A stretch of 64,000 nt of DNA from Ophelia neglecta (GCA_965285935.1 OZ260663.1:35030001-35094000), one strand, 5' to 3'. Numbered from the stretch's first letter, positions 1 to 52,142 are shown. Program-made: numbers and translations. The notes: a model not told the origin generated them from the letters alone.

Positions 1-684
1 AAACTGGTTTACCCGCATATTTATCTAAATGCTTATATCATACCATCAATGCATGAACAATCATACAACCGGGGTCGAAAACAATGCTCCCCTAGCCAGA
101 AAGATGGCCACTAGTAAATGCTAGGCTAGTAAATGTAGCAAATAGGACAGGGGCAGTCTAAACAGACAAGTTGTCCCTGATTATTGTCACGTCGTACATA
201 ATACCGATTGATCGTGCAGCCCGCGTCCAGATGACTACTACCGACCCGTATTGATCAATAAACCATAGACTTGTTCCGTTTTTGACCAAGTTTGCGTCCC
301 AATAGATTTCTGGTTGGACACTAGCTACCATCGATAAATCGATAACTGACCATAATCTTCGATTTCATATTGGCAGCTGTGCCTTTAATGCAGAGATACT
401 TAAAAGCACATCCCATTGTATGATAGAAGCTTTAACCCTAGACACAATCATCATAAGAGGGAAACATTAAAATGCCCCCCTATAGTTGATAATTGTTGCA
501 AGTACAGAATTTCTTTTGCTTCTTTAAAATGGCTACTATTTGCTTTCGCCATATTTATTGCTAATAAAAACCAGTTTATGCGCTTGACATAATTATTATT
601 AATGACAACTGGTACTCAATGATGATATTATGTCCAATGTATTGAGCTGATTGACTGAGTGAGATCTTGACTTAGTAATCTTAC

Positions 685-778
685 CTGCGAGGCTAGCCAG
701 CAGCAGGAACACGATAACCAGAGACACCGTGGTGCGCGGCGTGTTAGCAGTAGGGCGGTGTATATCCATGCCTGCCAT
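685..778 (-). CDS. First coding exon (signal peptide) of an unidentified secreted or type-I membrane protein; gene continues beyond the left edge
   Basis: Minus-strand translation is MAGMDIHRPTANTPRTTVSLVIVFLLLASLA+G: basic n-region, hydrophobic core VSLVIVFLLL, small residues ASLA. It ends at a strong donor GCAG|GTAAG (intron starts at 684). Phase 1 is typical of signal-peptide exons. The exon is GC-rich relative to its flanks. The second ATG (769) has the better Kozak context (GGCATGG). Confidence 0.75.
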
Positions 779-1070
779 CGGACTTCCCGCTACAGAGGCT
801 GGTCGACCTCCCCGACAACTATCCCAGGGGAACTCCGCTTGAAAGGGGAGCCCTCGGGCACCCGCTCTTGATGTCTGTCGGTAATCACAGTCTAATCCTT
901 TCTAGGCCAATTACCAATTCCAAACAGGCACATATCTGTTTTTCTTGTCTGGGGAGAAAAATGATTAGAAGTTATAAGTGAGTGTTGAGGGAATAATCCA
1001 AGAACGTGTCTAATCACGATGGATGGCATTTCAATGCTGTTTTCCCCATATCGTTGTCTCCAAGGTCAAC
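779..1070. promoter_or_regulatory. 5'UTR/proximal promoter of the signal-peptide gene (copy A of triplicated module)
   Basis: Directly upstream of the exon. Contains tandem CCAATT motifs (907-919), TTATAA (972-977), several TAATC(C/A) homeodomain-type sites and CAAGGTCA (~1061). These motifs are retained in two paralogous copies. Confidence 0.65.
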
Positions 1071-3324
1071 ACACTCCACTTGAAAACCTTTAACTACAAG
1101 TTAAATCAGCGACTATTTCCATTGTGAGTGTGCTACATAAATGACCGAATCCGGATCGGATCATGAATACAGACAAGAAGTTTAAATAGCAGGTTACTGA
1201 GGAATGTTTTCGCGTCGATAGCTAAACCCATTTTGAGGCTGATATGCGGGCTTAAATGCGCGCAATTTCATAACTTCGATAGATCATGTTGATTCGGAAG
1301 CAGACGATATTCATGAACTTAGAGCTGGGTTGTTCATATTCCCGCTGGTAGATTGTAATTCAGAAAAAACTCGTGTGAAACACACGTTAGATGATACCAA
1401 TGGCAATAACAGGCAATTGAGCGAATTATTGACACAACTGATTACTTGGTACCACTAATTATCTTAGCTGTAGTGAAAAATTTCCCACAGCGCGGGAAAT
1501 TAGAGTTTTTATCATTATATAAACGTCATTGAACACTTGGAACTATTCTCGCGATTGTTCCATCCGTGTTTATTCGATTGAATTTGTGCCACATTACCAT
1601 GAGGATCCACACAGTGATTATTAGAACAAACGAAGGAAGGTGCAATACATGCAAGCATTAAATCCACGTCGGTGTTTATTCTCTACACATATAAATAAGT
1701 ATATATACACAGCTGTATACGAAACCACTGTCATTCATCGGTCACGACATTCGCCAAGACAGCCGGCGTATTAATCTTACATAATATGATCTACTAAAAT
1801 AGGTGGAACTTAATACACAAGGAAAATCCCTATGATTGTGATTTGATTTAAGAAACAAACGCTGCTTTTTTTTCGTAGAATATCTTAACACTCGGAGCAT
1901 AATGTCACTTTTCAACGAAATGAAGACTTTTTATCCATCAATTGATAATCAATATTAATACATGTTGCTAACAGGGTTTGCCTTTAATAATTTTTTTTGC
2001 CTTTAATAACTTTGGCAATAATTTTACTGCAAGTATTTACATATTAATTCCATATCTGTTACACTACAATGACTTGAAGACTGTCTGTTTGGTAATGATC
2101 CAAAATATCACATGCGAGGGGTAGGTCGGCCCCATCTTCATGAAAACTAAATAAATACTCGGGGACAAGCTTAATTAATGTAAAATAGTCCTTTATTGAT
2201 TCATGAGATCCAGGCTTGTCCGTCATTGCTGGCACATTTTTGTTTTCTTATATACACGAGGAAAACACCTTGATATTGTTTTGCCATTTGGCTGTCACAC
2301 CAATTGCCACATTCTTAACATCTTTTTATAGACACCTTATCTTACACTCGTAATGTGCGGAACATGTGAGGACGAACAACTGCAGCGCCAGAGTGTCGAC
2401 ACATTAGGTAACACGTGATTAATTTTTGCTGGAGTTGGGGTAAGGATAACTGTATTGTCGTCTGCCCAAGTCCGTGGCAAAGGTTATAGGAAAAATACGC
2501 TAATAGAAAATGTATTCAAGGCAACGTGTGTGGATTTGCTGGCGATGACCATAAAACAAAGATAAATTACACTTTTAACTGGTCGCCTCGTTGGCACGGT
2601 GTGAACCGTCCTGCTGTCTGCTTAGTAACATGCATACTAACAAACGAGGCTCATGGAGCTAAATGTAACAGTCGATAATTGCCACAAAAGAAGTCGTTTG
2701 TTGGCATGATATCAATCATATATGTTAAAAAACCGGGCTTCACCAAGGCGAGGATTTATTATGTTGTCCGAAAAAAACATAACAAGATATTATTAAGACG
2801 GGGCCAAGCTTACGTCACCTATAATTGTAATAACTATTGGCTGTCAAGAAACATATAGCATGGTAAATCGTGGAGATGATCCCATAAAAGTTGAATATTA
2901 CCATTTTTCCATTTAAATTGCTTAACCTACAAGCCCACAAGATAAAGAAGGCAACAGATAAAGAGTTGCTGAGAACTTATTATAAAAAATACATGCAATG
3001 GTTTGTAAAAGGTCATATATAAATATGTTAGTTATAAATATATCTCGTACATTGAGGATTTCCTCACCCTGTTCATAGAGGGTCACAAGTTACCCTTGTA
3101 AGATCAAAAGCTTCATCGTTCTGACATACATCCACCGTGTGCGAGGTAGGACATCGCCAGTCTACACAACAATCAAAAACAACTTTGTCTATATAATGTC
3201 AGTATCTTTCCTTTGAGGTGGACAGTCTCGTTATTTTCAGGAAACAGCCTTTAGGGCCTACTAGTTAGCGGCAGCAGCATATCTAATTTCCTGAAAAGCT
3301 AGGAATCATACACTGTCCAAAGGA

Positions 3325-3800
3325 ATGTACATAACATGTGAAAGAATGCTGCATGGGTACGGAGGTGAGGAATTTCAATTTTTGAAAGCTATGGTTGCCT
3401 GCTTGTGGAATGACTGTGGTAGCCAAGCCGATAATGAGCTCAAAGGACAACTATATAGCGGCTCTGCATCTACCCCTGGAACTGATAAATATACGTGTTC
3501 ATGTAGCGCAGGCAAACCCAAGGGAGATCTACAGCGGGTAGAAGAGACACAGAAACACGGGGCATGTGCCCACCTGTTCCTTTCCAGCACTAACAGTGGA
3601 GACATTATGAATATTTATACCCACGATCAGGATGCTGGGGCCTGGGCCCGAAGGGAGTCAGGGACAAGTCCCCAATGGTATGATGCACACCCATAATTCA
3701 GTTTAGCCAGATTAGCAGGACGAGGAATAGACTAGTACTGAAGGCTGCCAACACTCTAACCCTAAATTTATGAATAGGATAAAAGACACATTTCTCCCTA
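3325..3800 (+). mobile_element. Ancient CR1/L2-type LINE 3' relic
   Basis: DLQRVEETQKHGAC resembles LE.IQKRAC, and the terminal MNRIKDTFLP resembles the TNRFKNSF.P ending of CR1/L2 ORF2. The composition is GC-richer than the flanks. Confidence 0.45.
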
Positions 3801-4369
3801 TTAACAGAATGGTGGAGATTTTACTATTTTCCAGAGAATAGTCATGAAGTTAAATACTCGATTATCACACTAGGTATCTGCTCTCCCAGAAAAGCAACGT
3901 GATAACGGCAATCAAACTCATGGTTAAAACGTATGATTGAGTTGTGTACAAAAAACCTATAGAGAGTCTTATCGAACTCGGCAGTATGTTATGTTAACAT
4001 TCACATCCGATAATGTTAGATGAGCACAGGTCTTGAAGAGAGGTGCGTGGCATTCAGTGGTCAGGAAAAAAAAAAGGGTTGTATCTGGCTTCATTCAGTA
4101 TTAATAAATAATTATTGAACTTTTAGGTTTAGGATGCCATGCTGCCATAATTGGTAATATATTTAAATGAAACGAAGATATTCTCATTTCAGGTTTTACG
4201 CTGCTACATTCTTCTTGTTCAAGGATGCTTCGTCCGGCGCTGTCCAAGTTTGACTTTTCATGTCACTAGTTAAGCCTCAAATCAATGATTTCTACAGAAA
4301 AAAGGACATTTCATTGCTGGTCAAACTTGAACCCTTGTCAGTAATAAGTAGCTAGTGAAACGTAGTTCG

Positions 4370-4660
4370 TACTGATGCAAATAAGATGGTAAGAAAATTG
4401 ATTATGTCGAGCCCCAGGAAGTCAGGTAGGGCGGATACCCCGAGCTGCTCTTGGATGTGTTTTATTCTCCTTGTAGACAGTAGATGTAAAAGAGGTGATA
4501 TGAGTGATGTGGTTGCCAGGATGCTTGGGAACCTCCTGAGAAACATGCAGCTGTCTACAATCACAGGTTAATGAGAAGACGCCTAAAGAAAAGGGGTTTG
4601 AACCGAATCACACGCAGCAGTTACAGCACCAGAAAGGAAGTCGCTTTTATCAGGAAACAC
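4370..4660 (+). mobile_element. Ancient L2/CR1 RT N-terminal relic
   Basis: VRKLIMSSPRKSGRADTP resembles V.KLI.SSP.KSC.LDP. It is followed at the expected spacing by LKKRGLN....SSY.....AFIRK, resembling LKKPGLD....NYRPVSNL.FISK. Confidence 0.55.
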
Positions 4661-7600
4661 CCATGCTTTAGGTTGAAGAGGTATTGATCTTGTAAAAGAA
4701 CAGTAAGCGACATTACAGCGTCTCCTTTGTATAGCTGCAGTGAGCGTGATAACTGCGTTATCTACCCTGGAGATGCACATTTAACGTGTCTATAACAGGC
4801 TTATTAAATGAATAAAGCCTCTCGAGGCACGATACCATAATAATTGTTATCAATATATCTGTTGCTGACACGACTTCATAGCTTTTTTTCCATTACAAAG
4901 CACGAAAAAGTGTCTTGAAGTCACGCCGTGGGCAAACTTGAGTAGAAATGAAGCAGTTAGAACCCTGATCACTGTAACGGAGACATTTGTAGATATGAAC
5001 AGAACGATTTTAGAGCGCATGGTTTCAAATATACCCCTAAGACACTAAATGGGTCACATGGTGCTTATGTGTTGTTAAACCCCCCGTAATCCTAATTCAA
5101 CCTTACCATATTGATATGCTTTGATTATAGAAGTTTGCTTATGTCGCCAGGTAGGCGCACCTTTGCGGTAATAATTGTTTATGAACAAACCAGCAAGTGA
5201 TGACCTCCAGGGTTATGTTGTGTGATGACGCTGTTAACTTGTTACTTTTATATAAGATTCATTAAACTTTTGCTTTTACAATTTGCTTTTGAATAGTTCG
5301 GTGTTGAAGTTGAGAAGACAACAGTGCCACGTTAGGTTGGTGAAACAAACAACGTATGGTTGTTTTAGTTGAATAAATCATTAACTTTGAGAAGAATTAT
5401 GCATAGAACAATAAAAATTCTGCAAACATTGCCTTTGATTATCAATGGCAAAGGTTTCTATCAACGTAGTTGTTTCTGTGTAGTTAGTTGTTTACTGAGT
5501 ACTCAAAATATTGTCTGAGACTGTCTGAGTAGGTCAGAATAGCATCTCTTGTACAGTTATCATAAAAAAATATGTATGCTGGTCGTTTTGCTCCTTTTCG
5601 ATAATACTGAGAAGCGAAATTTTGATATTTAAAACCGACCAGCTTCATTACAAGCCAAGTAAGCAAAGTAAGGCAGACGTATCTGGACTGGACGATGTCG
5701 GCTAAACTTAGCCAACCTATGACGTATGACATCCCGAGGATGAACTGTTAAGACACGTGTACTAATTGAAGAAAGGCAGACGACAGCTTCTGGCTATAAG
5801 TCTTTAAAGCTGTGCAACGCAATCAAGGGTATATTGGAGCTGGTATACTGAGAAAACTTGAATGTGACAGGACCAGCGATGTTAACTTATCGAGATAATC
5901 CTTAGCAGAGTTTGAGCAGAAAACAATTAGTTTTCAGTCTTTATGTCAATAGAATATTTCGAACCAGTTTGTTCAGGCAAAAACAACATTTATTATGAAT
6001 CGATAGTGCAGACTATTTCACAGCCGGGAACTTTTCCAAAAATTATGGAATGGCACCAATGGCACCCCGGTTGGAGCCGCTGTATACGATGTTATCCAGA
6101 TATGAGCCAGTATATGAATATGTATGATACTAGTATAAAAATATAGGAGCCGATGAAGACTTAAACAATTTGACAGAGTGATGTTGGTTTAAGGATGGCT
6201 GAGGTTTCTGTCTATTAGCAATTTGATTTGACGTATAATAAAACAAATATGGACTTGATTGGGCAACCAGGCGAAAAACTTTCCTTCGAGATGTGTCAGT
6301 CAGGACAAATAGTTTGGCCTAGTTCAGCAAGTCACGTGGTATATTCGTTAACTAGCCGATGACACTTTTCTTCTTATAGTGAACCGTATGTAACTTCATT
6401 GCATATGTGAAGTACGCAATGATGGCAAGGACACACCTTTTGCTTCTACAGGCCGAGATACTGACAGTGCTTCATTGAATGAAAAGCAAGCATAACTCCA
6501 GGAATGGAATAACTGAGTCTTTGTCTATAGAATTAGTTCAAATCAGCCCTTTTCCAATAAACGAAACAAATATGATATAGCATCACTCTGAATATTGATA
6601 TTAGGAGTCCGATGGACTGTAACAATCTGATGTACAGTGCTCCAGAATGATACTTATATTTTACGGGTCCTGGATAGAAGTCCCCGGACTAAAACTAATA
6701 GGGGTATAGATTGTCCAGTCTAAAATTCCCGGAAACGTAAGTCCCCCCACGACTAAACAAAGAACTATATGACATGGAGTGTCTCCGCAAAGAAATTCTA
6801 TATATATCACTACCTATGCTTACTATTATGAATAGAGACCGCCTGTTCTTGAGAACGAATCCCTAGCATAAAATGTGTTTTGTGCGTAACAAAAGTAACA
6901 AAGGGTGAAACGTCTTGGGGGGTTGAGTGGGGGAATGGCCTAGGCACGACAATCGTTGTATCATGTTTTCTGGGAGTAACACACATTCTTTAAGAGAACC
7001 AATAATACGTATACGACTATAAAGAGTCCAGGGGGCTTTCTTAATCTCTTCATCCCGGCATATCATAACAAACAACGAGTAACAAAGGTTCATATTGTTC
7101 TGCAAAGTTTTGGTAATAGGTAAGGAGGTGAAGGAGAAAAAAACCAGGATTGTGGTCGAAGCGAAAATACTTGAACATTTCGTCTGGCCCGTTTTGAAAA
7201 ATCATGAATCAATCAAAGCCCAGTTGATTTCTCAGAAAGGGCCCTTAAGAGATGGAGTAATAACGAACGGGTGAGAGTGGGCCATATCCCACGACCTTTA
7301 TAGAGATTTGTGCTCTTTTCGGTACCATAGGTCGGGGTAATAATCATATATCTAAAGAGTTACAAATTGAATTCTCTTCACTTAAAGTAAATCCTACCTC
7401 TTCGCCATGAATATGTTGTCATCCATCCTAATGTAAACATATATCCATTTATATATCAAATACTGAGTTCTTCCAAGTCTAACATAAAGCTATGCCCCAT
7501 GCACGTCTGTAAAGACTAATAGTTGTCACTTAATTATGTCAGAGAGATTGACTCTTCCCGACCGCGCTGAGAAGCTAAACCCAACTGCACAATGGTGTCC

Positions 7601-10600
7601 TGAGCTCTCAATTGGTGCCAACGCATTGGTTCATCGCCAGCGATCGCTATTGCAAAGACTGCAAAGAAAAGTGACCGAGGTTTACTCAGAGCGAAAGCGG
7701 CACTAGCCGTGTCAGGAGCTATACCAAAGAAAGTTTATTGATCAATACAGGAATCATCTGCATTCGAGAATGAACGTAGCCATGTATTAGGTGTTTAAGT
7801 ATTAATGCTGTTTAAATATATTCTGGTTATTTGCTCCATGATCCAAACAATGTAAGGGTCTCTTTATGCGTGTGATGTACAAAACCGATATCGGCATTTT
7901 AGTTTTTGGGTTGTACATAATTTTTAAAACCAATAGCAGGTCACATGAAACTGTATAAAAATGTATATCTATAAGTGCATATCCGCACAAACCTGATTTC
8001 TTCTTTAACATGAACAAAGCGACGAATCAGGTAGTAAACAAATTGTATCTAGTTACTTTTAAACAGCAAAGATCATTCATGCTTACTAACGTTAGTAAAT
8101 GTTTTTCAGTATCACTGGCTTTTCCTTATGATCTAATCGTGCAACGAGTGCATGCCACTTCTAAGCTGTATTTGTAAGGTTGACTTAAATGTTTTTTTAC
8201 GGAGTGTCTTTGATTGAAGATTTGCTCGTGGTATGGCCAATAACGTCAGTCTTGAGATTGATTTTGCCCGAATGATTGAAGTGTCTGTGTCTTTTAGTAC
8301 AAAACCAGGAAAAAAACTTAGAAAAGAACCCATGTTGAACTTGCTATTTTTTATTCACACCTTTTTTTTACTGTGCGTGTCTGGATAATCAAGGTGCTTG
8401 CCTCGAGATCAGCTCACTAGTCTTCTAAAAAGTGGTAGAAATATGCGGAAATAGAATCATTTGTACTGATATATGTCTGTTGGCATAGCTTTTAAAACCT
8501 AGCACAACTTGTAAAGGTATAGCAATAAAGAACATTTCAAAATACAAAGGTGTTGACTCACTATGAGAAGAACATGGACAACTGCAAGAGATTATTTCGT
8601 GTTTTCATTAGTTAGCTTCCCATTACTCAATAGTAACCATGAAATTCCTATTTCCCTACCATAAAGGGTGTACTTGTCCTTACGTGTGGCCTTTTATTAG
8701 GAGCTTGTGCTTTTCCGTCTGAATTTAACGGGAGACACTTAGCCCTGATGTCACAATTACTGAGCCACGAAAATATAAACTTCTGGCTCAAACGGGCATA
8801 GGATGTATTCATGTGTGTGGGCTTATGACTGCTGGTTCCTGATGATTTCGGACCGGTTTAATGGCCTATTCTCGACTAAGGATTTGGATTTGTCCACTCC
8901 CAGTATTTTCTAATAATGTAAGGAATAAATTTATCGCTGATACTCAATGCGGCGAATTCATTCTCTATATATGAATATACAATTTCCAACAAGAGTCTTG
9001 TATACTAATCCATACAACACCCAGGTTGTGGAACAATTTGAGTGTCTCTGTACGACATTCTTCATTTTATTAGAAAGCAAATGAATACTTATTGGTTTAA
9101 GGCATATTTGTATATAATGTGTTTTGAAAAAGGATACATTTTAATCTTTAATTGCAAACACCTGTGATAATTTTATTCCTTATTATAAAGGTACATTTTA
9201 TATGAACCAACTTACTAGAAACTGGAACGTTAAGTGACTCTATGTACAACGACACCAAGTAAACTTGGCTCAGAAACGACTCGGTTGGCTGCCTTACAAA
9301 GATTACTTGATCGTTAGTGAGTCGAAGTAAAGAAACATTCTAACTTAATACAATAAACTATATTCAAAGATAGAATACAAGCTTTGAATGTTGTCTGTGA
9401 AAACCAAAATTGATTTGATTTTTTGTTTCTTACCTGGAATGTTAATATTGATATATGTTGCTTGATGACTATATATACATCTATATTTTTCATAAGACGA
9501 CTTCGCATTGGCATATCATGACAACTATATATCAACCTCCGATGAAATTAGGAAGAAGTCAACTGAATGAAGAAGTTATCTTAGTGTCGATAATATATTC
9601 TGATGATTAGCGTCTCGACCAATTTTCCCAGACTTAGGTCAGCTAGACTGTCATCACTTTGTCATCAGCTGCCTATCATTTCTCAGTCAGAGGTATCATT
9701 TGATAATATGATATGTTTCACCTTCTCGACTCCTGCCGGCGCACCTCATTATGAATTTACCACCCGACGCTCCTTTGATATTGAACATGGTTTGTTTGAT
9801 GATAACGTTGTCATTCATATTGCTTATATATGAATTTTTTATGAATGCATCTAGCGTATCTGTCAATAATTTGGTCCTTTACGTTGTAAATGAGAATATT
9901 GCCCCAAAAAGACAGGATTATTGTTTACGTTTTACCAAAACTGCAACCTAATCTGTTGCTACTCGAAATACATATAGTTCCACTGGTTATCAGCGTCTGT
10001 TATCCGACGAGCGGGCAATGTTTATCCAGGAATATGTCCTGGAGCCGATTAACTATAAACTTCGAGCCCGATGACCAACACCTCAGGGCTTGATTGCCTC
10101 TATTTCAGGGAGTTCTAGCCTTCAAGACACCAAATATCTTGTCCTTAACTCTCAATTCAGAGATTCCATTTATTCACAGGTGCCCTCGCCTATTAAACCC
10201 ATGTTAAATCTGGCGAGACCGAACAAAAACAAAAGTGTCCTTAATTAAACAATTGCCTTAATTTACAGAACCCATTTATGACAGATTCGACTGCATTACA
10301 CTTGTAGCAATAGAGCTTTTTCCGTCCCCATAGACAAGGCATTTGCAGGTTATCAAATGGTGTCGAGGAGGTATTTGAACTAAGTTTTACGAGGCAGTAA
10401 CATGAATAAATAGTGTTGTAATAATTGCCTGCGGAAGCTAATTAGACGAACACGTTCACAGATTGATAGCAATTATTACAATGGGAGCACGCATCTTTCG
10501 TTAAAACCACAAACACTGATGTCTGTTATGAATCGCCCATCGCGAAGTATCGAAGGATATTATGGCGAATCCTGGCATTGGTTAATTTCTTGAATACATA

Positions 10601-13446
10601 CAGGCATACATTTCCAAATAGTCATAATTTGAAATAGACTACATGCCAACTTAAAAAAAGAACTTCTGGAAAATGTAAAATCCACAGTCTCAGATTGGAC
10701 AGAAACTATTCAATGACACATTGAATGATATTCGTTTGGGCAAGAATTCATTGGGGGCTGTTTGTAAACATTTCATTGATTGTCATATGTTTGCGGTGTA
10801 ACCTATTTGTATTAGTCGCTCATTTCCGTTCGAGTGAATTTGGTAGCAACTAGCATTATATTTTCCAATAAAAAAGTAGATATTAACCCTTATACAATAT
10901 TAGTCCCATTTTGATACGGCACCCACTGGGTGTTTAAAAATTCACTATGTTTTTACTGTGCACTTAAATAATGTGATCGACAGAAACTGAACAAACCTGA
11001 CAGATTCAAGTAGTGCATACATGACTATTGATAAAAATGGAACGGTTTGCCTATTAAAGTGGCAAGACAATTTTGCTTGTCACTGTCTGTCTTTCACTTT
11101 GTTATGCCACATGTTAGTAAGTAAGTTCCAATGACCGAAGTTTTATGTTTAGAACAGCATGATCGATCATCCTGTCACCGTTCGTTATAATGGTAATTGA
11201 TCGTGTGCGCCATCAATCGAATCTCTGCCAATTAATGTTGTCTTCCTGATATAAAAAAAAACAATAAATCTCAAGAGGCGAACAAAGTGGCAAATCGACT
11301 TTTAAATGTCACTTCAGCCTAACGTATAATGTAATGAGACGCGCTACGGAGGAATTGACCAGCAGCGTTATTGACAAATATACCATTCTGGCCTAGGCCC
11401 TGGCCTAGAACACTCGGGTAGGCTACCATCACTCGTACATTGCAACTGGAACACCAGTACAATTAGCTTATGCCTTGGAGCAAACACCCCATTTTTATCA
11501 TTCCCGCGAATGATAAAAACCTTAATTAGACTCTTCAATGAAGCATATTATTCCAAGCAGTTGTTTTCTAGAAGTTCTATCATGGTGTGTTTTCTCGTGG
11601 TATTATTTTGCTTAAGACATGTGAAACTCATATTGAAGACATACAGCATGTAATCGTCGGTCATAAAATCTAATTTCTTCTTCTTTGGTTGATCAGCGCT
11701 TATCTTCAATTTTACTTTAAAATACCGAGGTGTGTCATATCTTGAAGAAACACTTACAACGAAACCAAGAATGAATTTAGAACGCTCACCCAAACAAGGA
11801 TTATGAGCACAAAATTGGCAGTAATTCTTCTCATGCCGGTGAGTATTATAAGAACGGTCATAATCAAAGGTCTCTATATTCGGCATTTTTTGAAACCTTT
11901 ATTAGGCATTGATCTGTTGCAATATTCTTTCAGTTGATTTCGAAATACCCCAGATTATACTAAATCAGCTATAGTCATGAGAGCTGGCAACCCACTTTAT
12001 ATGAAAGATGAACATGATATATCAATAAATATGGTATTACATGTCCTGGCCAATGTATGCTGTATAATGTTTTTTCATCGTATTGATCAATTACTTTATT
12101 TCAACCATTTTCTTATTTTGATTTTGATTTATGATAGTTAATATGCAATAAAATGCTGATGCATATATTGAATAGTATTAACTGATGGATGGATGTTACC
12201 TTTGGTATCAAAGTGTATGAGCACCTACATGGAAAGATTAATGGCGTAAACACAAATTAGTAGAATAGATTACTACTAAATGTTATCTTTAGAAAGTCAC
12301 ATTTGTTAATATGTTAGACTAAATGTCCCTGTCATTCACAAGTTGCAGGAGATAAGTGATCACACATCCAACTAAGGCCTTTTTCAATTTCTTCTGAGAA
12401 GTGTTTAACCAAAAGTTATACATATACCTGATGTCAGTAAAGAAGATAACCGTTAATGATTTATTAAAGGTAGGTATGGTACATTTCCATGTGTCCTTTT
12501 ACCGACTGATACAGACTCTCTAGCTACATTCTGGCAACATTATACATACACTGTGATCAATATCACTACTACCGAGGTCGAGTACGTGCCAACGATTTAT
12601 ACCATGTTACACCATTTAAAGGGAACTTTTATTGTGAGTTTATGGCATTTTCATTACTGGCAATAAATCAAACGGATTTAAATATTCATTAAATATATAT
12701 GATATCTACCTTTATGAGTAAGGCCGGACAATTACTAATACAACAAGTCAAACATCAGATGCTCCTAAAAACCTTATTTATTGTGTGTGTAAAGGGATCA
12801 AGTTGATGGCCATCGGTAGAAACTAGTTCTAAAATAGCTTCTATAGGATCGAGATGCGAGAGTCTTTTGTCCCTAGATCGGATAGTTGTTTATCGTCTGG
12901 GTTTATCTATCGCCAATGTCTCATTCATCCAACATGACCACAATGATGGTTAAACATGATATGGAATTTGAGCATAACAGCAGTTTATAAATTGATAACT
13001 TTGGTACAATTCGCAATAGTTGTGTCCCAGATATGTGTTTAATCAGAACAAAAAGACATACAGATGGTACACAGTTTTTTGTAGCGGACATAAAGAATTT
13101 GTGGACGTTCCGTTAACATATCGCAACCTTCCATTCAGAAATGATCTGGCTGTCAAACACCATGATCTTGCGCTGAAGCTATATTGGACGAAATCCATCT
13201 GGTTCTAGGTGTGTAACCGTATTTAATAGGACATATTTAGCCTCGATATACATCATTATGAATGCATGCCGATTGCAGAAAAAAAAATTTGAAAGGAGCA
13301 AACTCAGATTATACCCATCTGTAGAACTATTGCATCTTTTCCACTTGTTATTTTAGTCTATAAAAACTGTTTGGACATGACGCTTTTCTCTTTTCATTTA
13401 GTTTTACTGTTCTATAGTATCGTGTTACAACGACGGATAAAAAACG

Positions 13447-13826
13447 CTGCCAGTAGCACTTTTGAGCACAGTGAGTGTGCTGTTAGGCGTATTTTACTCG
13501 GTGCAATCCGACATGCTACCAGCTAATGTTGCCCGATAGCCCTCCGACAACTATCCCCAGGGGGCTCTGGTGGAAAAGTCGAGACCTCATTTTTTCCGTT
13601 CTTGATGTATCCCAGTAATCGCGGTGTAATGCTTTATAGGCAAATTACCAATTCCAAACTGTCGCCTATCGCTTTTTCGGGTCATCAGGGGACACTATAA
13701 GAAGTTATAAGTGAGTGTTGAGGGAGTACCACAGAACGTGATTAATCACGCTAGATGGCATCTTAATGGCGGTTTGCATCATTGTTTATTTCAGTTGCCT
13801 TGCATATCGACATAGTCAAGATCAAC
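13447..13826 (-). pseudogene. Copy B: duplicated promoter plus decayed first exon
   Basis: Colinear with ~696-1070. Identical AATTACCAATTCCAAAC (13643-13659) and AAGTTATAAGTGAGTGTTGAGGGA (13702-13725). CCGACAACTATCCC is shared with copy A. A's first ATG aligns to ATT and there is no donor at the homologous position. Confidence 0.7.
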
Positions 13827-15542
13827 CATGAGTGTCCAAGTAGAATAACATGAACATGACAATTGTCTTTATTCAAATGTTTACGTTATGACATTCGTAG
13901 TTTAATTTGGAGCTTAATTGACTTATCCCCTAAAAAATATTGATTTCTGAGACATGCCTCAAAAGAAAATTGTCGTCACTGAAACCAATGCAACAGGCGA
14001 ATATATGCATAATCATCTTCTTGAACGTATTGATAGCACGGAGGACGCTCATAACACTGACAGAAGCTTACTTGCGAACTAGAGCGACACCAGTTCTCTC
14101 GTGATTAAAACGAAAAAAGGTACATCTGCTGATTTAAGGTTTTCTGTTTAGGTCGACCAGTCGACAAACAAACCGCTGGAATCGGATTAGCTGTGCAGTT
14201 TCCATTCTGTTGATGGAGAATATTAATAAAGGAAGGAGTCATTCTGAGGGAAATATAATAACACGCATCATCGTATCATTTAAGGATGGCTATGAAAGAA
14301 AAAAAACTGCAATCACATTTCCAGAAAATCAGCGTGTAATAAGATTTGTTTCCTAAATTACTTGTCAGAGTAATGGCTATCGTGTTTCGTAGGGCGCATG
14401 TTCATAAACAAATTATTATATTTTATCTGACAGATGATCAGACCGTCAGAACAAAACATTGTCTTTATCAAAGCATCAATAGTCCGCGGGATATTGTTTC
14501 GACGATTTGTCGAGCCGTAGGACGACTTCACTTGCATTAGAACTGCTCATTACAGGAGATTATACCTCAGTTATATGTTTACGGCAGAACAATCCTTCTT
14601 TTCTCTCCACTGGTTTAAAGACTCATCCCTATCCGTGGTGGCTTATTCGCATCATGTCTTCAGATATGATGGATCTGCACTTGCTATATCTAACATCGGC
14701 GTCTGATATGTTGCTACGCGAAAGCAAGTATTATTACAGAGATGACCGGTGTCTTATTACATGTCAACTGACGACAGTAGGAGACAGACGTGTATTTATA
14801 TATATCCCCAAAAGATGTCTACCGAATAATTTTTAACTAAACTGGCCTTGCCAGCCATTGATCTTACATAAGGGGAACACTAAGTTGAACACCTGAGTGG
14901 TTGGATCGAATGACTCTCCTCCGATTATGACTCAATATGTTTAGATTATTATGGCAAGGGTAAGTAATCTGATGACTGTTCTTATGGACAAAGTATGATA
15001 AGTTGAAATTTTACTGATATAATCTGATATCTAATAATCCACTCCAATTTCCACAACGGTAAATAAGTTAATATAGAAATGAATTAAACATATTAGTTAC
15101 TTGATGTCATTGGTTGAATGTAGGAATAGAAAAATTATTGTTTTAATTGACATGTGCGACTGTTTTAGATACGAATTGCTGTATATGATCCAAAAGAACC
15201 GATTTTATTACGGAGAAGGTGATTAGTTATGATTCCAATTATAATAAGCACACTGCCAAAAAAAACTCAACTTAACATTCACGCTTTGGAATTAACCGTG
15301 GTGAGTTATTTTCTGGATTCTGCTGCTGCTTGATACATTCGTAATACAATTCTCAAGTGTAAATTCATTTGCTGTTAATAGTTTATCCTATTCCAATTCA
15401 GTCAAAAAAGTTTTTTTCAGGAGAGTTAGGCCATGAGGTGAGAGGTTATTATATATGTAACATAATCAACTACAATGAGTTGAATATAATATTCGAACAT
15501 TGCAATTGACTGTTCTTGTATATTTGGGTTGGGTTGGTGGAA

Positions 15543-15753
15543 AGCTCTTGATTAGAAGTTGAGGTGCGGAGGGCTGTGGAGGGGGTAACCTGAGATCAGG
15601 ACACAACGTGATACTTAAATAACCCGCAGAACCCTTAAATGAACCCGAATCGAGTCCGTACCTTTCTGTGAATATAACGCTTCTCGCCCTCTAGAATGAT
15701 CTATTACTTCCGCCTCCGCCTAGGCAGAGCACTTCCGCGTTTAATCTAAATCC
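15543..15753. mobile_element. Highly diverged copy of the same MITE family
   Basis: GCTCTTGATTAGAAGTTGAGGTGCGGAGG and TCCGCCTCCGC...TCCGCGTTTAATC termini align with the 40224 copy, and the length is similar. Confidence 0.7.
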
Positions 15754-15968
15754 CTAAATATGAATGCAAGTTAGTTACATATTAACCTATGTTCATTACT
15801 TATGACGGCTCGATTAGACCACTTGTCAGCTTTCGTTGTAACGGTCATTTATCTTTGTGCGATCAATTACATTCTGTCACTTTGGTAAGATAAACTTCTC
15901 ATTCCTAAACCAAGACATTACATTCAATAAAAATTCATATATACACACAAGAACAAATCACTGTGATC

Positions 15969-16114
15969 AGGCAATTTCTGGTTGGCGGAAAGCCCCCTGC
16001 GAATGCCACCTGCGTTTCCATTTGTGACTTCATCATTTCAATAGTAATGAAAACGACACAATAATAAAACGCAGACGGTGTTCGCAGGTGGCGTTATCTG
16101 CCCTAAAATTGCCT
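15969..16114. mobile_element. Foldback/MITE-like imperfect inverted repeat (~50-bp arms)
   Basis: AGGCAATTT..GGCGGA..CCTGCGAA..CTGCGTTT pairs with AAACGCAG..TTCGCAGG..TCTGCC..AAATTGCCT. Confidence 0.65.
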
Positions 16115-17494
16115 TATAAATGTACCTCAGTGTTTTGAAATAAATTTTAAGTAGCAAGACCGGCATTAGTCTTTTGCAAAGTAAAGTGCAAAAGATCATT
16201 TGCCGAAAACAAATTTAATTTTATATGAAAGATGCAATGCTTGGATTTAAAATACATATGAACTCAAACTCGTCATCGACGGTTTTTTGAAAAATTATAA
16301 TTCTACGAACTATATTTCTTCTGTCATTCCTAACCGACTTCTCTACATGCAGTCTATGCCCTGTGTGTTTTTCTACCAGTTAGAAGCTGTAATTGCTTTA
16401 TTGTTTCACAATTGGCAGTTATGTTGCCATTAATAATTGGCCCACCAAACGTTTTTAAAAGCCGGCTGAACCTTGAGTTTTATCCAATTGGATGCACATC
16501 AGTCCGCACCATGAAGCACTTGCAAGGAAAAAATGCTGTAAAGGTAAGGCGATCATTATTTCATACTACATGAAGCTGAACTCCAATATGTATTACTTTA
16601 CTGAAATACTGCATCAAATTGAGCAGGACACGATATGATGTCTGGCGACATACGCATATACTCCAGTAGCTTTCTTTGCGAAAAAATGTAATAGTTAAAG
16701 TGCATGTAAAATCCTAACTGCCAAATTAAGGCATATCTACAGCTTTATACGTACATGTTTCTTGTATTTTAATGGGCCAGTTACTATATTCCTATTGTAA
16801 ATAGTGAAATCACTCCGAACTGAATTATATGTACAACTACAAAGCCAAGTGTGGGAGAATCTTATTCTCTTGATACTTATTTTGTGATCTTTTTGGCAGG
16901 TAATGGGCACACGTAAGGCATAAGTTCATGTTATAAATCAATAGAGCCTGGGGAGACAAATTTAACAAGCATGCTCTACTAGCAGTGCCGCAGAAGATCC
17001 ATCTTAACTTTGTCACTTTGTATCAGGTCACCACTGAATTCTGTCTTTACGATGTCGATATTGTTATTCCCTTCATATAGACGCGTATAATTAGCTGTAT
17101 CAAGCTCATTTTCTTCATTATATAAGTTTGAGTATGCTATGAGGAGATCAGCAACACACTATTCATAGTTGACTAACCAATTTCGTGGTTCACTATTTAA
17201 TGTATGTCAGTCGAGTCATTGTTACGGAACAACATTTCCAGCTATTTGCTGGAACCAGACATACATTTCGGTTAGATGGTGGAAGGATAATTGTGATAAA
17301 ACTCGGCAAAGGTGCATTCAGCACAGTATATTCCTTGAAGAACATGATGCTTCCTTGATTAAGTCGTCGAGACATTGTTGTCACTAGCTTGTATTCTATA
17401 TTTGCTCATCCATCACGTAATCGTTTTTATTGGCGGAGTTTTTAACGGTCGGATTTTTATTACCAAATGTTTAAAAGGTTGCCTTTATTCACAA

Positions 17495-17826
17495 ATATAG
17501 TAGCCGATAGTACCACTGTGCGAATGCTGAGGGACGTTACTTCTCAGTGAAACCTGACATACTAAAAAATACTGTAGACCGATGGCATTGTCGACAAAAA
17601 TCCCGTGGGTCTCTGTAGCAAAGTGGAGACCTCCTTTGTAGGCCAATTACCAATTCCAAACAGTATCCTATCTTTTATTTCGGGTCTGCAGAGAACATGA
17701 TTAAAAGTTATAAGTGAGTGTTGAGGGAGCAATCACAGTACGTGAGTAATCACAATGAATGGCATTTTAATGATGCTTTCTATCGTAGTCTATTTCAGGT
17801 CTCAATGTTTATGTTGGCAAGGTCAC
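17495..17826 (-). pseudogene. Copy C: duplicated promoter plus decayed first exon
   Basis: Colinear with copies A and B. Identical blocks at 17645-17661 and 17705-17728. A deletion of roughly 45 bp follows GAGACCTC. The exon-derived part resembles B more than A. Confidence 0.7.
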
Positions 17827-19244
17827 AAAACTGACCAAATCTAAAAAAAAACATTAACTACCGACTCCCAGACTTATCTTATATATTCTTATAGGATTTC
17901 CTATTAATTCCAAACAATAGGAGCATTACAAACAGTTATCAGCATTCGGAAAATATACAATAGAAAGCTTGCTGCGACTACTAGTTTCATTTTCAATATT
18001 ACTTCATTAACTTGGAGTCAATATTTGTTTAGTCAATTTGGCTTCCATCATATCAATAGGGAGCGGAGAGAAAGTCGTGTCTCCATGAAAGCTTATTAAG
18101 GATTAAATGCTGGCTTCTACCCCACTATTGGCCACGTTTTGCTTTAACAACAAGGAACTAATAAATCTGTCTAGGAATGCTTTATAATATGAATCGTAAA
18201 ATGACAAATAATTTGTCTTGTGGATAATGTTGAAACTGGGACAAACATAGCGGTTATCCATTTGGTTTGCACTTCTTATCTGCAGGTGTAAGCAAAAGGT
18301 CAATCCAGCCATGGCGGCGTACAAATAAACAGTGTTTGACGTACCATTCTTCTGTTCAACAAATTGATAAGAATAGAAATATCGTCGTGTGACGAGTTGA
18401 AACTTAACTCTATTACTTTTCAGGTAAGATTCGTGCAAATATCAATTTGATTACGTTAGAATTTACTATATTGACGATTCCTCCAAATGTCATTTTGATA
18501 ACGATAGAATTTATAACAGCGCCATGTTGAACAAATGGACTTTTTTTCTGGTATGTTCCGACAATGACAGTTACAAGTAGGTAGGTTGTAGGAGGATTAG
18601 GGTAGCTACGACTTCCTCCGGAAACGCGTGCTGCTATCCATAACCACACTTCAATGGCAACACGTCTATAAGCTAATCTCGGTCTAATGCGCATGTGGCA
18701 CGAACATTGTCAAAGGACAATCGCACTTTTATCACAAAAGCAGGAAAAACGCAGGATGACATTTGACATGTATCTTTGCGCTGTAGATTAACAGCAAGTA
18801 ATAGTAAAGTCTTTGACAAATTAGAACAGCGTGAATTTAACGTAATTATGATCATAGCGCTCTCGATTGAGACAATTGAATACAGGTTGCTGGAATATTC
18901 TGTCACTGGCTAGGAATGAATTAAAGGTAATCTCTCTCATGGTATAGGTTGCAACGCCAGTTTACATTCACTCTAAAGTATCATTTGTTTTAAACTACGG
19001 CGATTTAAATAAAACTTGAATATTGGTAATCCTAAGGATGAATCGTTAAAGCTTATCCATTATTGAAGATAGGCCAGCTGAGACTTTCAATTATAACGGT
19101 TATCATTCTTTGTATTTCAATCTGTCATTCAGTTAAATCCAATTTTGCAGGAATGTGATCGATTTATATTTTAATCGCGGGGTCCATAAAAAGTTGCAGC
19201 AGCTGCACATGGTTCATAATAAACAAAGCAGTTTGAATTTAAAA

Positions 19245-19400
19245 AAGTGGGACCCTGGTATAAATGCAGGTTTTGTGAGTGGTACAGTGAGGAGGCACTG
19301 CTGTGAGGATCGAAGTACGCTCGATGGGGCGATGTAATGTGGGATAGTCCCCAAGGAACACAGGGACATAGAAGGCAGCACTTTCTTGACCAGGAGGCAG
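19245..19400 (+). mobile_element. Ancient CR1-like RT relic
   Basis: GFVSG...RWGDVMWDSPQGTQG...HFL resembles FLS.R...W..V..GVPQGT.LGP.LFL. Confidence 0.4.
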
Positions 19401-22687: not shown

Positions 22688-22914
22688 CACTTTTGATTAA
22701 AAGAGGAGACGTGGATGTATGGCGGAGGTTAAAACCTGAGATTAGAACACGACACTAAACTTGGATAGCCATAACCCTTACCCTTTCCCTCGCTTTGAAA
22801 TAAACAAAAACCAGAGCCCTAACTCTTCTATAGATACAAAGCTTCATGCCCTTCACAACTATCAATTACCCCTACCTCGCATAGCCTCCACTCCCCCGTC
22901 TTTAATCAATAACA
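22688..22914. mobile_element. Diverged copy of the same MITE family
   Basis: CTTTTGATTAAAAGAGGAGACGTGG...GGCGGAGG and CGCATAGCCTCC...TTTAATCAATA ends. Internal TAGAACA..CACTA, AACCCT and GCTTCATGCC are shared with the 40224 copy. Confidence 0.8.
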
Positions 22915-31984: not shown

Positions 31985-32225
31985 AATGGAAACTTACTGT
32001 TTTCACGGTAACCGCACTATTTCCAGTATGTCGTATTGACCCAGAGTTTTCGTTTGTCAATAGTCAATGGAAAGTAAATCCAATTAGTATTCAGTCATGC
32101 GGATTGTGCTCCAGTCACGTTTGTCATCAACCTCGTCCCTGCCAGGTCTAGATAACCCATGTATTTTTTTTCCCTGCAGAAAACGAGGAAGGTGCCACGA
32201 AATGCACAGAAATTTCATCTATCTG
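31985..32225. promoter_or_regulatory. Paralogous conserved non-coding block D (pair with 45057-45300)
   Basis: GGAAAGTAAATCCAATTAGTATTCAGTCATGCG (32069-32101) matches 45144-45176 at 31/33. Flanking AATGGAAACT, TATTGACCC, CACGTTT, GTCCCTG and TAGATAACC are colinear. The regulatory role is inferred. Confidence 0.5.
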
Positions 32226-33169
32226 AAAAACGACAAACAATATGCTTTACTGCATTTAATAATCCACCACTCTCTTAAGGATGGTGTTCCTTGTTCCAGT
32301 ATGCTGTTTTTTACTCAGAATTAGTTCATGTGCGGGCAGTGCTTGATATTTCTATATACATGTAAACAGATGAAGAATTAATTATCATTAATGTGTGTCA
32401 ACGAGGGAAAACCTAACACTATTTGCTTATACGCGCTGATTATATGACGTATGATTATTATATTGTAGTGATCATGTCATCATAGAAACGATGTGGTACT
32501 ATGTTGTCCAGAACCAATTCGGCGGCACCTTCAGCGGGGAGCGACCAAATACTACCTCTAATCAGTAGGACCTGTTTTCAAACATGACACATTTCCCTAT
32601 GTTGACATAAAATTTAGGGGTGATGACACATAACCTGCCCATGCAAACGTAGTTTCATGCTCCCCGTCCATTTCTGTTGAGTTGACATAGGTACAGTACC
32701 TATGATATTTTGGCTGCCTGTATGAAGCATCGGAAGTTAAGGTCTGCCAAAATGATGTCTATGGGAGATTTTCTATGGCTATTTGCGGCCTAATAGGGCA
32801 ATTTATAGCACGGTATGCAGCATTTTCAATTAATTTATTCTAGCCCTAGTAATAATTTTGCGTGCACAACTTCCTTATGAACAAAGTTGATTTTAACGTT
32901 TTCACTTTTGTCGGGCAAAACCTCCGAATAAACAAAGATTCAATCTGTATTGAAACATACCATAAAAAATATGCACTAAGACAGTTTTGACGTTATACAG
33001 CAAAGTGACAGATAGCTAGAAAGTAATTTTGGTAACTGTCACCGCAGTCACACATATTACAATACCCCAAACAATCCAGCCAGCTTAATGTACATTTTTT
33101 AACCAGCACCGGAAATAAGGATGTCAGATTAAATGAAGCCAGATTACATTTTGGAAAAGAACTCACCCG

Positions 33170-33340
33170 GCAGCCTTGATTGATAATGTCTGCGTACAAG
33201 CTAAAATAACCCGCAGTATTAAAGAATTTAGGTCCATCAAGGATAAAACATGGCAGAGCAAAGTAGTCTCCAATTGCAGACCACCTGCGCACTTTAGCAG
33301 AGAGAATGCCACTTTCTTTAGTGATGTTGATTACCAATTA
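33170..33340 (+). mobile_element. Possible LINE RT relic
   Basis: QAKITRSIK...VSNCRPP resembles AKITP..K...SNYRPIS. Confidence 0.3.
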
Positions 33341-40223: not shown

Positions 40224-40449
40224 GGCTTTTGATTAAAAGCGGAGGCGCGGAACCATGCGGAGGTAAATCCCGAAAATAGAACAGAGCACTAGACCTATCA
40301 AACCTGTCCCTAACCCTTCCCCTAACCCTGAAATTAACCCTCCGTCCTAACCCTGTCCTTGCTGACGATTATTTGCTTCATGCCACTCAGAAATACTCAT
40401 GACCTCCGCCTCCGCATAGCCTCCGCACCTCCGCGTTTAATCAATAGCC
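40224..40449. mobile_element. MITE (226 bp) with GG...CC terminal inverted repeats, 8-bp TSD and internal CCCTAA-like repeats
   Basis: TIRs GGCTTTTGATTAAAAGCGGAGG... / ...CCTCCGCGTTTAATCAATAGCC. TSD ATCGGAAA at 40216-40223 and 40450-40457. Confidence 0.88.
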
Positions 40450-52125: not shown

Positions 52126-52142
52126 GAAAAAGATATAAATGA

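What the first reader, a model, noticed from the sequence alone, without database searches (positions are those of the whole stretch)
685..17826. Triplicated promoter/first-exon module: coding part decayed, regulatory blocks identical
Seen: three same-orientation copies (A ~696-1070, B 13447-13826, C 17495-17826) of a ~350-bp unit spanning the signal-peptide exon, 5'UTR and promoter. The exon-derived part of B and C is barely alignable (start lost, indels). Yet AATTACCAATTCCAAAC (17 bp) and AAGTTATAAGTGAGTGTTGAGGGA (24 bp) are identical in all three, ACGTG-nn-TAATCAC-n5-ATGGCAT-nTn-AATG keeps exact spacing, and a CAAG(G/A)TCA nuclear-receptor-like half-site follows. I found no downstream coding exons between the copies. 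Inference: selection has kept the cis-elements after gene duplication and loss. They may act as promoter-derived shadow enhancers, or as an array of alternative promoters/first exons feeding the shared downstream gene. Established analogy: clustered protocadherin and UGT1 tandem promoters carrying a conserved element.
Basis: partly seen in the sequence, partly recalled or inferred. Interest (0 to 1): 0.8.

Follow-up and report, generated by a model that had tools for sequence, protein, structure and literature searches.

The report
Triplicated receptor-gene promoter; two orphan copies
The promoter and first exon of a lectin-type receptor gene occur three times in a row; the two upstream copies can no longer encode protein, yet they keep the promoter's short control sequences letter-perfect, so they are probably still working as regulatory elements, which remains untested.

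Summary
Three same-orientation copies of a ~350-400 bp unit lie at 685-1070 (A), ~13441-13855 (B) and ~17499-17858 (C). They are the only copies in the 762-Mb genome, by exact, mismatch, BLAST and profile searches, so the unit is not a transposon.

Copy A is the promoter, 5'UTR and signal-peptide exon of a minus-strand gene. Its SUEL-lectin, CUB, sushi-like and TM/tail exons lie left of the window. The gene belongs to a family with at least 150 lectin exons in this genome.

B and C keep an upstream ATG but hit a stop after 6-7 codons. No relics of downstream family exons lie between the copies, although the same scan found two decayed lectin relics elsewhere in the window.

Divergence is strongly uneven. 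A 24-mer containing TTATAA and a 17-mer are invariant, and their spacing is fixed at 42-43 nt. The spacer between them and the exon part are near random. Runs that long arose in at most 4 of 100,000 column shuffles.

Distant homologues of the module upstream of paralogs X2 and X3 have not kept the blocks.

Best reading: partial 5'-end duplicates whose promoter elements are held by selection, as extra promoters or promoter-type enhancers. No RNA or sister-species evidence could be obtained, so function is inferred.

The parts
685..778 (-). Copy A: coding part of exon 1 of gene X. ATG at 778 (MAGMDIH...) or 769 (MDIH...). The signal peptide ends ...LLLASLA. The donor is CAG|GTAAGA: the exon ends at 685, phase 1.
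   Evidence: The phase fits the exon-2 acceptor TTTTTTTCAG|AA TGT AAA, and the junction matches the signal-peptide/lectin junction of the Capitella homologue P0022.
779..908 (-). Copy A: 5'UTR-derived part. It contains a near-invariant GGGATAGTTGTCGG and a possible short hairpin.
   Evidence: Pairwise identity is 0.56-0.74.
909..925 (-). Copy A: invariant 17-mer (block 2). On the minus strand it carries two AATTGG repeats; on the plus strand two CCAAT. The nearly invariant stretch extends to 896-927.
969..992 (-). Copy A: invariant 24-mer (block 1) containing the palindromic TATA-like TTATAA (972-977). It lies 43 nt from block 2.
1004..1036 (-). Copy A: distal promoter motifs ACGTG (1004-1008), TAATCAC (1011-1017), ATGGCAT (1023-1029) and AATG (1033-1036), with spacing fixed among the copies.
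1061..1068 (-). Copy A: CAAGGTCA, an extended nuclear-receptor half-site-like motif at the outer edge of the unit.
13441..13855 (-). Copy B, an orphan copy. 17-mer 13643-13659; 24-mer 13702-13725 (42-nt spacer); ACGTG..ATGGCAT 13736-13761; CAAGATCA 13817-13824. The exon-derived part at 13441-13642 has an ATG followed by a stop after 6 codons. A weak GT (GTT|GTAACA) lies at 13428-13427, just outside the unit.
17499..17858 (-). Copy C, an orphan copy. 17-mer 17645-17661; 24-mer 17705-17728 (43-nt spacer); ACGTG..ATGGCAT 17740-17765; CAAGGTCA 17818-17825. It has a 43-nt deletion in the UTR part and an ATG followed by a stop after 7 codons. A moderate GT (TTG|GTAATA) lies at 17463-17462, just outside the unit.

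Best explanation
The unit is the TATA-type promoter, 5'UTR and signal-peptide exon of gene X. Gene X is a minus-strand SUEL-lectin/CUB/sushi-like single-pass receptor gene whose other exons lie 3-10.4 kb to the left of the window.

The 5' end alone was copied twice upstream, first giving the ancestor of B and C and then splitting B from C. Coding capacity then decayed in B and C.

B and C still carry the whole set of promoter elements: block 1 with TTATAA, block 2 at a fixed 42-43 nt, and the ACGTG / TAATCAC / ATGGCAT motifs. These have been held unchanged by purifying selection while the sequence around and between them drifted to near-random.

I infer that B and C are still bound by the same factors as A and most likely still fire as promoters. 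They would make non-coding leader transcripts on the minus strand and act on gene X as co-regulated upstream promoters or promoter-type enhancers.

Shown here: the anatomy, the uniqueness, the rate heterogeneity and the loss of coding capacity. Inferred: selection, factor binding, transcription and the target gene.
For: Three copies only. This holds for exact and mismatch patterns, a composite spaced pattern, BLAST of 196 bp and a 154-position profile. The three score E 1e-35 to 1e-37 and the next hit 0.23.

Gene X. The exon-1 ORF has a phase-1 donor matching the exon-2 acceptor. SUEL_Lectin and CUB domains are found by Pfam. Exon order matches Capitella CAPTEDRAFT_225510.

Rate heterogeneity. 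The blocks are 92-96% identical pairwise and invariant three-way. The TATA-to-block-2 spacer is 45-69% identical and the exon part 41-59%. Invariant runs of 24 and 17 arose in 4 and 1 of 100,000 shuffles. Block spacing stays at 42-43 nt although the spacer sequence itself has diverged.

Sharp edges. Homology stops within about 250 bp of the blocks. All flank windows give z near 0, even for B-C. A simulation shows that flanks of 55-60% identity or more would have been detected.

No later exons. No relics of lectin, CUB, sushi or tail exons lie between the copies. The same scan found lectin relics of 66-69% identity at 38346-38417 and 58474-58573.

The blocks are free to change elsewhere. Remote collinear homologues of the module lie directly upstream of X2 exon 1 and of the X3 lectin exon, and in an inverted relic D. 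They are the top non-self hits among about 950 windows. They keep only about 14 of 24 and 11 of 17 block positions; D keeps 13 of 17.

Core-promoter geometry, a TATA plus a downstream block at fixed distance, matters for initiation rather than for enhancer function alone. That is why I favour active promoters; this step is inference.
Against: There is no expression, chromatin or cross-species evidence. The only orthologue loci reached are too distant or truncated.

Transcripts from B or C spliced to exon 2 would lack a start codon and signal peptide, so their use is unclear.

The donor-like GTs near the homologous position in B and C are weak to moderate. They are only approximately positional (within about 10 nt) and could be chance.

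Exon identities among X, X2 and X3 are mosaic, and 4-fold divergence is only 0.26-0.31. This suggests gene conversion operates in the family. Some of the core similarity among A, B and C may therefore be conversion rather than constraint, though tracts of 17-24 bp with shared edges in all three copies are not what conversion produces.

TTATAA is palindromic, and the CCAAT/TATA geometry also fits a plus-strand promoter.
Confidence: 0.55

Rival explanations
1. B and C are alternative promoters with non-coding first exons that splice to exon 2 of gene X. This would be a UGT1/protocadherin-like layout, giving regulatory or unproductive isoforms rather than protein variants.
For: The copies lie in the same orientation, in tandem, upstream of the shared exons. 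The full core-promoter geometry is conserved. GTAA lies within about 10 nt of the position homologous to A's donor in both B (13428) and C (17463). The edge of the homologous unit lies close to the exon-intron boundary.
Against: There is no usable ATG or signal peptide in B or C: stops come after 6-7 codons. Exon 2 has a phase-1 acceptor and no internal start that would yield a secreted protein. B's donor, GTT|GTAACA, is weak. No RNA evidence exists.
Confidence: 0.2
2. B and C are neutral relics of dead 5' ends, ordinary debris of a birth-and-death gene family. On this reading the identical blocks come from short-tract gene conversion from A, or from chance.
For: The neighbourhood is full of family debris: two lectin-exon relics, relic D, and at least 150 family lectin exons genome-wide. 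The mosaic exon identities among X, X2 and X3 hint at conversion.
Against: Invariant runs of 24 and 17 nt arose in at most 4 of 100,000 shuffles. The two blocks are separated by a spacer of only 45-69% identity with unchanged length. Both blocks share the same edges in all three copies. Five further site-sized motifs keep exact spacing. Relic D and the X2 and X3 promoters show what unconstrained divergence of the blocks looks like.
Confidence: 0.12
3. The module is a plus-strand or bidirectional promoter. CCAAT boxes would sit about 90 nt and TATAAG about 30 nt upstream of a plus-strand start near 1003, 13735 and 17740. A short first exon would run from the conserved AATG to CAAG|GT and feed a plus-strand gene or ncRNA to the right.
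For: TTATAA is a palindrome. The CCAAT-to-TATA distance is classical for a plus-strand start. The frame from AATG to CAAG is open in all three copies. Its lengths of 31, 55 and 52 nt are all 1 mod 3, giving phase 1 as in family first exons. The B and C peptides align at 48%. Family genes and relics on the plus strand lie to the right.
Against: The GTCA donors are very weak, and B has GAT there. A's peptide is short and poorly hydrophobic. No plus-strand exon follows within a family-typical distance. The X2 homologue of the module sits at the same distance upstream of a minus-strand exon 1, which fixes the ancestral direction as minus. ORFs of about 30 codons are common by chance, and this reading was found post hoc.
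Confidence: 0.08
4. B and C are promoters of separate, unrecognised minus-strand genes or lncRNAs lying in the 12.4-kb and 3.6-kb spacers. These would be captured promoters.
For: Conserved promoter geometry with no family exons downstream. Most of the spacer DNA is single-copy.
Against: The ten longest spacer ORFs gave no significant Pfam match. Rfam found nothing in 1-20000. No convincing signal-peptide or ORF exon lies downstream. The two spacers share no detectable similarity.
Confidence: 0.05

Closest known systems
Variable-first-exon clusters (clustered protocadherins, UGT1A), in which each variable exon has its own promoter carrying a conserved sequence element (from established knowledge; see also PMC4151104)
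   Same: Promoter plus first-exon units lie in tandem and in the same orientation, upstream of one set of downstream exons. Each unit carries a short conserved promoter element. The units arose by local tandem duplication.
   Different: Here only the proximal unit A encodes anything. B and C have lost the start codon and signal peptide, so they cannot diversify the protein. There are only three units. Splicing of B or C to exon 2 has not been shown.
Shadow (redundant) enhancers, and promoters with enhancer activity ('ePromoters') (from established knowledge)
   Same: Redundant copies of one regulatory module, carrying the same motif set, sit near a single target gene. Promoter-derived sequence is retained without coding output.
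   Different: Those classes are defined by activity assays, and none is available here. The conservation of TATA-to-downstream-block spacing points to initiation rather than enhancer function alone.
Partial-gene relics in tandem families evolving by birth and death
   Same: The locus lies in a family with at least 150 lectin exons and abundant debris: lectin-exon relics at 38.3 and 58.5 kb, and promoter relic D.
   Different: True relics decay evenly. B and C show letter-perfect blocks with fixed spacing amid near-random sequence.
Capitella teleta CAPTEDRAFT_225510 (R7T8R0), an uncharacterised SUEL-lectin/CUB single-pass protein
   Same: Gene X has the same exon and domain order: signal peptide, SUEL lectin, CUB, sushi-like, TM, and a tail with a YESP-type motif. 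Identity is 62% in the lectin exon.
   Different: It is a single annotated annelid gene. Its upstream 10 kb shows no trace of the module. No function is known for either protein.

Membership tests
Transposable element / SINE / dispersed repeat | Many dispersed copies in the genome | tested here: not met
   Exactly three copies, all in this locus, by pattern, BLAST and profile searches of the whole 762-Mb genome.
Transposable element / SINE / dispersed repeat | Terminal repeats, or flanks shared between copies | tested here: not met
   The flanks of A, B and C are unrelated, with z near 0. No inverted repeats bracket the units.
Variable-first-exon cluster (protocadherin / UGT1A type) | Tandem, same-orientation promoter plus first-exon units upstream of shared downstream exons | tested here: met
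   C, B and A all lie on the minus strand upstream of the lectin, CUB, sushi and tail exons of gene X.
Variable-first-exon cluster (protocadherin / UGT1A type) | Each first exon supplies a start codon and a coding segment | tested here: not met
   B and C have stops 6-7 codons after the only retained ATG and no signal peptide.
Variable-first-exon cluster (protocadherin / UGT1A type) | A conserved promoter element in every unit | tested here: met
   The 24-mer, the 17-mer and three shorter motifs are invariant with fixed spacing.
Variable-first-exon cluster (protocadherin / UGT1A type) | A functional splice donor at the end of each first exon, and transcripts joined to the constant exons | tested here: inconclusive
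   GTAA lies within about 10 nt of the homologous position in B (weak) and C (moderate).
Shadow enhancer / promoter-type enhancer | A redundant element carrying the same factor-binding motifs as the primary element | tested here: met
   All conserved motifs of A are present in B and C at the same spacing. Actual binding was not tested.
Shadow enhancer / promoter-type enhancer | Drives an overlapping expression pattern of the same target gene | not testable with these tools
   This needs reporter, deletion or chromatin-contact data.
Neutral pseudogene relic | Even, unconstrained decay along the fragment | tested here: not met
   Invariant runs of 24 and 17 arose in at most 4 of 100,000 shuffles, and the block spacing is unchanged.
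SUEL-lectin/CUB/sushi single-pass receptor family (gene X itself) | SUEL lectin and CUB domains, followed by a sushi-like exon, a TM segment and a tail, in that order | tested here: met
   Pfam finds SUEL_Lectin (2.2e-08) and CUB (1.6e-04). Exon-by-exon tblastn against P0022 is collinear.

The most novel reading that the evidence does not exclude
Two non-coding 'ghost' promoters are kept by selection upstream of a receptor gene as a promoter-competition or promoter-choice device. Firing of C, B or A would be alternative, as in stochastic protocadherin promoter choice, so that only A yields protein. The orphan copies would then set the probability or level of expression of one member of a receptor repertoire of at least 150 lectin-exon copies.
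Probability: 0.1. Interest if true: 0.75.

Novelty: new variant of a known kind. Interest (0 to 1): 0.5.

Why it matters
If B and C are active, this would be a clean natural case of a promoter that outlives its gene's coding function and is kept as a regulatory element. The element boundaries are marked out at single-base resolution by paralogous copies within one genome: a 24-mer, a 17-mer, three short sites and fixed spacing.

That gives a ready-made mutagenesis map for an otherwise unstudied promoter in a lophotrochozoan-type receptor family that has expanded to at least 150 lectin-exon copies.

It also bears on how alternative-promoter arrays arise, since this locus could be an early or abortive stage of one.

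If B and C are inactive, the finding is an unusual pattern of decay in ordinary gene-family debris.

Tried and rejected

**Transposon.** Rejected: only three copies genome-wide.

**Known RNA gene.** Rfam found nothing in 1-20000. A small 5'UTR hairpin has only weak support from three sequences.

**Whole-gene duplication followed by decay.**
- No lectin, CUB, sushi or tail relics lie between the copies by tblastn.
- A sensitive nucleotide scan also found none there, although it did detect relics elsewhere.
- The flanks are not homologous.

**Hidden genes in the spacers.** The ten longest ORFs gave no significant Pfam match.

**Cross-species conservation.**
- The Capitella orthologue locus shows only chance-level matches.
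- An ENA contig carrying a gene 76% identical to X at nucleotide level in the lectin exon has only 4.4 kb upstream. It gave two weak collinear matches but no blocks, which is inconclusive.
- A scan of metagenome contigs for the 24-mer found nothing.

**Family-wide cis-module.** An 80-kb stretch of the large family array at C5:92.62-92.70 Mb has no match to the module.

**Plus-strand coding mini-exon.** Considered and kept only as a low-probability rival.

**Literature.** Two searches found no description of this family or of this kind of orphan promoter copy.

**Spliced model.** The exons of gene X were searched singly, by reference.


Full report
**What is there.** The window is G000:C5:35030001-35094000 of a 762-Mb eukaryotic genome with about 37% G+C. 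Reading the three places, the repeat finder and alignments confirm three direct copies of one unit.
- Copy A lies at about 685-1070, B at about 13441-13855 and C at about 17499-17858.
- The 24-mer sits at 969-992, 13702-13725 and 17705-17728. The 17-mer sits at 909-925, 13643-13659 and 17645-17661. Both are identical in all three copies.
- The two blocks are 43, 42 and 43 nt apart.
- ACGTG-nn-TAATCAC-n5-ATGGCAT, followed by nTn-AATG, keeps exact spacing.
- CAAGGTCA (CAAGATCA in B) closes the unit, at a variable distance.

**Copy number.** The 24-mer with up to 2 mismatches, the exact 17-mer, a composite spaced pattern, the 196-bp core by BLAST and a 154-position profile all find these three sites and nothing else significant in the whole genome. 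In the profile search the three score E 1e-35 to 1e-37 and the next hit scores 0.23. One-mismatch hits of the 17-mer are no more frequent than hits of its reversed control. Rfam finds nothing in 1-20000.

**What copy A is.**
- On the minus strand, A carries an ORF starting at 778 or 769. It ends in a hydrophobic signal peptide and a CAG|GTAAGA donor, with the exon ending at 685 in phase 1.
- I fetched 40 kb to the left and found the rest of the gene on the same strand. In window coordinates, the SUEL-lectin exon lies at -2954..-3235, a CUB exon at -4911..-5249, a sushi-like exon at -8526..-8684 and a TM/tail exon at -10005..-10394. Pfam supports the lectin and CUB assignments, and tblastn with the best full-length homologue is collinear.
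- The exon-2 acceptor is phase 1 and joins the signal peptide to ...ECKEYCWE, as in the homologue.
- That homologue is Capitella teleta CAPTEDRAFT_225510.
- The exons were searched one at a time by reference. I built no joined model.
- The lectin exon has at least 150 copies in this genome, with very large arrays on C5 at 92.5-93.6 Mb. This agrees with earlier unchecked notes of the scan on the same family.

**State of B and C.**
- Both retain the upstream ATG of A but reach a stop after 6-7 codons. The MDIH start and the signal peptide are gone.
- G+C in the exon-derived part has relaxed from 59% in A to 49% in B and 43% in C. The background is 37-38%.
- GTAA lies within about 10 nt of the position homologous to A's donor in both copies. 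B's version is weak and C's is moderate. This is suggestive only.

**Uneven divergence.**
- Of 299 ungapped columns, 54.5% are invariant. Invariant runs of 24 and 17 were reached in only 4 and 1 of 100,000 column shuffles.
- Pairwise identity is 92-96% in the blocks and 75-80% in the distal promoter. It is 45-69% in the spacer between the blocks, 56-74% in the UTR part and 41-59% in the exon part.
- Outside the blocks, B and C are closer to each other than either is to A. The order of events was therefore A versus the ancestor of B and C first, then B versus C.
- The spacer has diverged to near-random sequence yet kept its length within 1 nt, which argues for a constraint on distance.

**Edges and origin.**
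- Homology is confined to about 250 bp either side of the 17-mer. Ten flanking 250-bp windows per pair give z near 0, even for B-C.
- A simulation shows that flanks of 55-60% identity or more would almost always give z above 3.
- Self-BLAST of 104 kb finds no other similarity between the spacers. The spacers are mostly single-copy DNA with a few old dispersed repeats.
- No relic of the lectin, CUB, sushi or tail exons lies between A, B and C.
- The same nucleotide scan does find decayed lectin-exon relics at 58474-58573 (69% identity) and 38346-38417 (66%), both on the plus strand.
- Partial duplication of the 5' end only is therefore more likely than whole-gene duplication followed by decay. 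Alternatively, large deletions were tolerated everywhere except close to the conserved blocks.

**Paralog comparison.**
- Two close paralogs lie just right of the window. X2 is on the minus strand with its lectin exon at window 71276-71557. X3 is on the plus strand with its lectin exon at 89525-89809.
- Between X and these two, only exons align by BLAST.
- A more sensitive local-alignment scan of 143 kb on both strands gave three top non-self hits for the module:
  - an inverted relic D at window -33977..-33902;
  - the 300 bp directly upstream of the X3 lectin exon, in plus orientation;
  - the region directly upstream of a convincing X2 exon 1, in minus orientation. That exon has its ATG at 72414, ends ...ASASLA and has a CAG|GTGAGT donor.
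- The X2 match has z of about 5, with 0 of 500 shuffles and 2-3 of about 360 random genomic windows reaching it. It is collinear, at the same distance from the ATG as in A.
- The module is thus the ancestral promoter of this sub-family. This fixes its direction as minus.
- In X2, X3 and D the blocks are not kept: about 14 of 24 and 11 of 17 positions in X2, and 13 of 17 in D.
- The blocks are therefore free to change when function changes or is lost. This makes their perfect retention in the two non-coding copies more telling.

**Interpretation.**
- The sequence evidence supports purifying selection on the promoter elements of B and C.
- Gene conversion deserves mention. Exon identities among X, X2 and X3 are mosaic, and 4-fold divergence is only 0.26-0.31. 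But conversion does not produce 17-24-bp islands with the same edges in three copies, separated by a diverged spacer of unchanged length.
- What is conserved includes core-promoter geometry: a TATA-like box plus a block centred roughly 30 nt downstream of the predicted start. I therefore favour the view that B and C still initiate transcription, rather than acting only as factor-binding enhancers.
- Any transcripts would be non-coding, so the protocadherin/UGT1 analogy holds for layout but not for protein diversification.
- TTATAA is palindromic. A plus-strand reading is possible: CCAAT about 90 nt upstream, and an open phase-1 mini-frame from AATG to CAAG|GT in all three copies. It rests on very weak donors, is broken in B, and is contradicted by the X2 homology. 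I keep it as a minor rival.

**What could not be done.**
- No RNA, chromatin or close-relative evidence was obtainable.
- The Capitella locus is too distant.
- The ENA contig L044 is truncated 4.4 kb upstream and gave only weak, inconclusive matches.
- A metagenome scan for the 24-mer was empty.
- Two literature searches found no description of this family or phenomenon.

**Verdict.**
- The case is a new variant of known kinds, namely alternative-promoter arrays and promoter-derived regulatory elements. It sits in an uncharacterised, greatly expanded receptor family.
- Interest is moderate.

Noticed in passing
window 58474-58573 (+) and 38346-38417 (+): Two decayed relics of the family's SUEL-lectin exon. 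They are 69% and 66% identical to gene X's exon at nucleotide level and invisible to tblastn. No matching CUB, sushi or tail relics were found downstream. They are debris of dead plus-strand family members.
   Followed up: partly
G000:C5:34996023-34996098 (window -33977..-33902, + orientation; L008:6023-6098): A possible fourth, inverted and far more decayed copy (D) of the module. It keeps 13 of the 17 block-2 letters and 77% identity to C over 53 nt, but not the 24-mer. It is locally significant (nhmmer E 3e-4 in 144 kb) but not genome-wide (E 7.8). No family exons lie downstream of it.
   Followed up: partly
G000:C5:35095270-35123119 (window 65270-93119; L032-L034): Two close paralogs of gene X lie head-to-head just right of the window. 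X2 is on the minus strand, with its lectin exon at 71276-71557 and a candidate exon 1 at 72339-72414. X3 is on the plus strand, with its lectin exon at 89525-89809. Exon identities to X are mosaic (X2: lectin 84%, CUB 70%, sushi 88%, tail 69%), which suggests exon-scale gene conversion. I could not find a phase-compatible exon 1 for X3.
   Followed up: partly
window 51436-56211 (+): A broken non-LTR (LINE-type) retrotransposon. Several consecutive ORFs carry RVT_1 and zf-RVT matches, plus an endonuclease-like stretch that Pfam did not match.
   Followed up: partly
window 32063-36170 vs 45139-49690: Three collinear short matches at 69-79% identity, each pair about 13-14 kb apart: 32063-32157 with 45139-45232, 33999-34141 with 47984-48125, and 36025-36170 with 49544-49690. 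This looks like an old segmental duplication of about 4 kb. No conserved ORFs were detected.
   Followed up: no
window 10074-10296, 8802-8894, 15969-16149, 16324-16635, 19279-19895: Old dispersed repeats at 70-86% identity to many loci on several chromosomes, lying in the spacers between and beside the copies. They are probably SINE- or MITE-like. The 75-nt repeat at 15679-15753 also recurs at 40375-40449 and 22878-22911.
   Followed up: no
window 800-852, 13535-13590, 17590-17632 (minus strand): A possible 6-bp hairpin in the 5'UTR-derived part of all three copies (GGTCTC...GAGACC in C), with partly compensatory changes. RNAalifold gives only -5.1 kcal/mol, and three sequences give no statistical power.
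   Followed up: partly
G000:C5:92620001-92700000 (L036-L043): An 80-kb sample of the large family array holds about ten minus-strand SUEL-CUB-sushi genes spaced 6-10 kb apart. Neighbouring genes share extensive upstream similarity of their own (up to 94%), but none of it matches the module studied here.
   Followed up: partly
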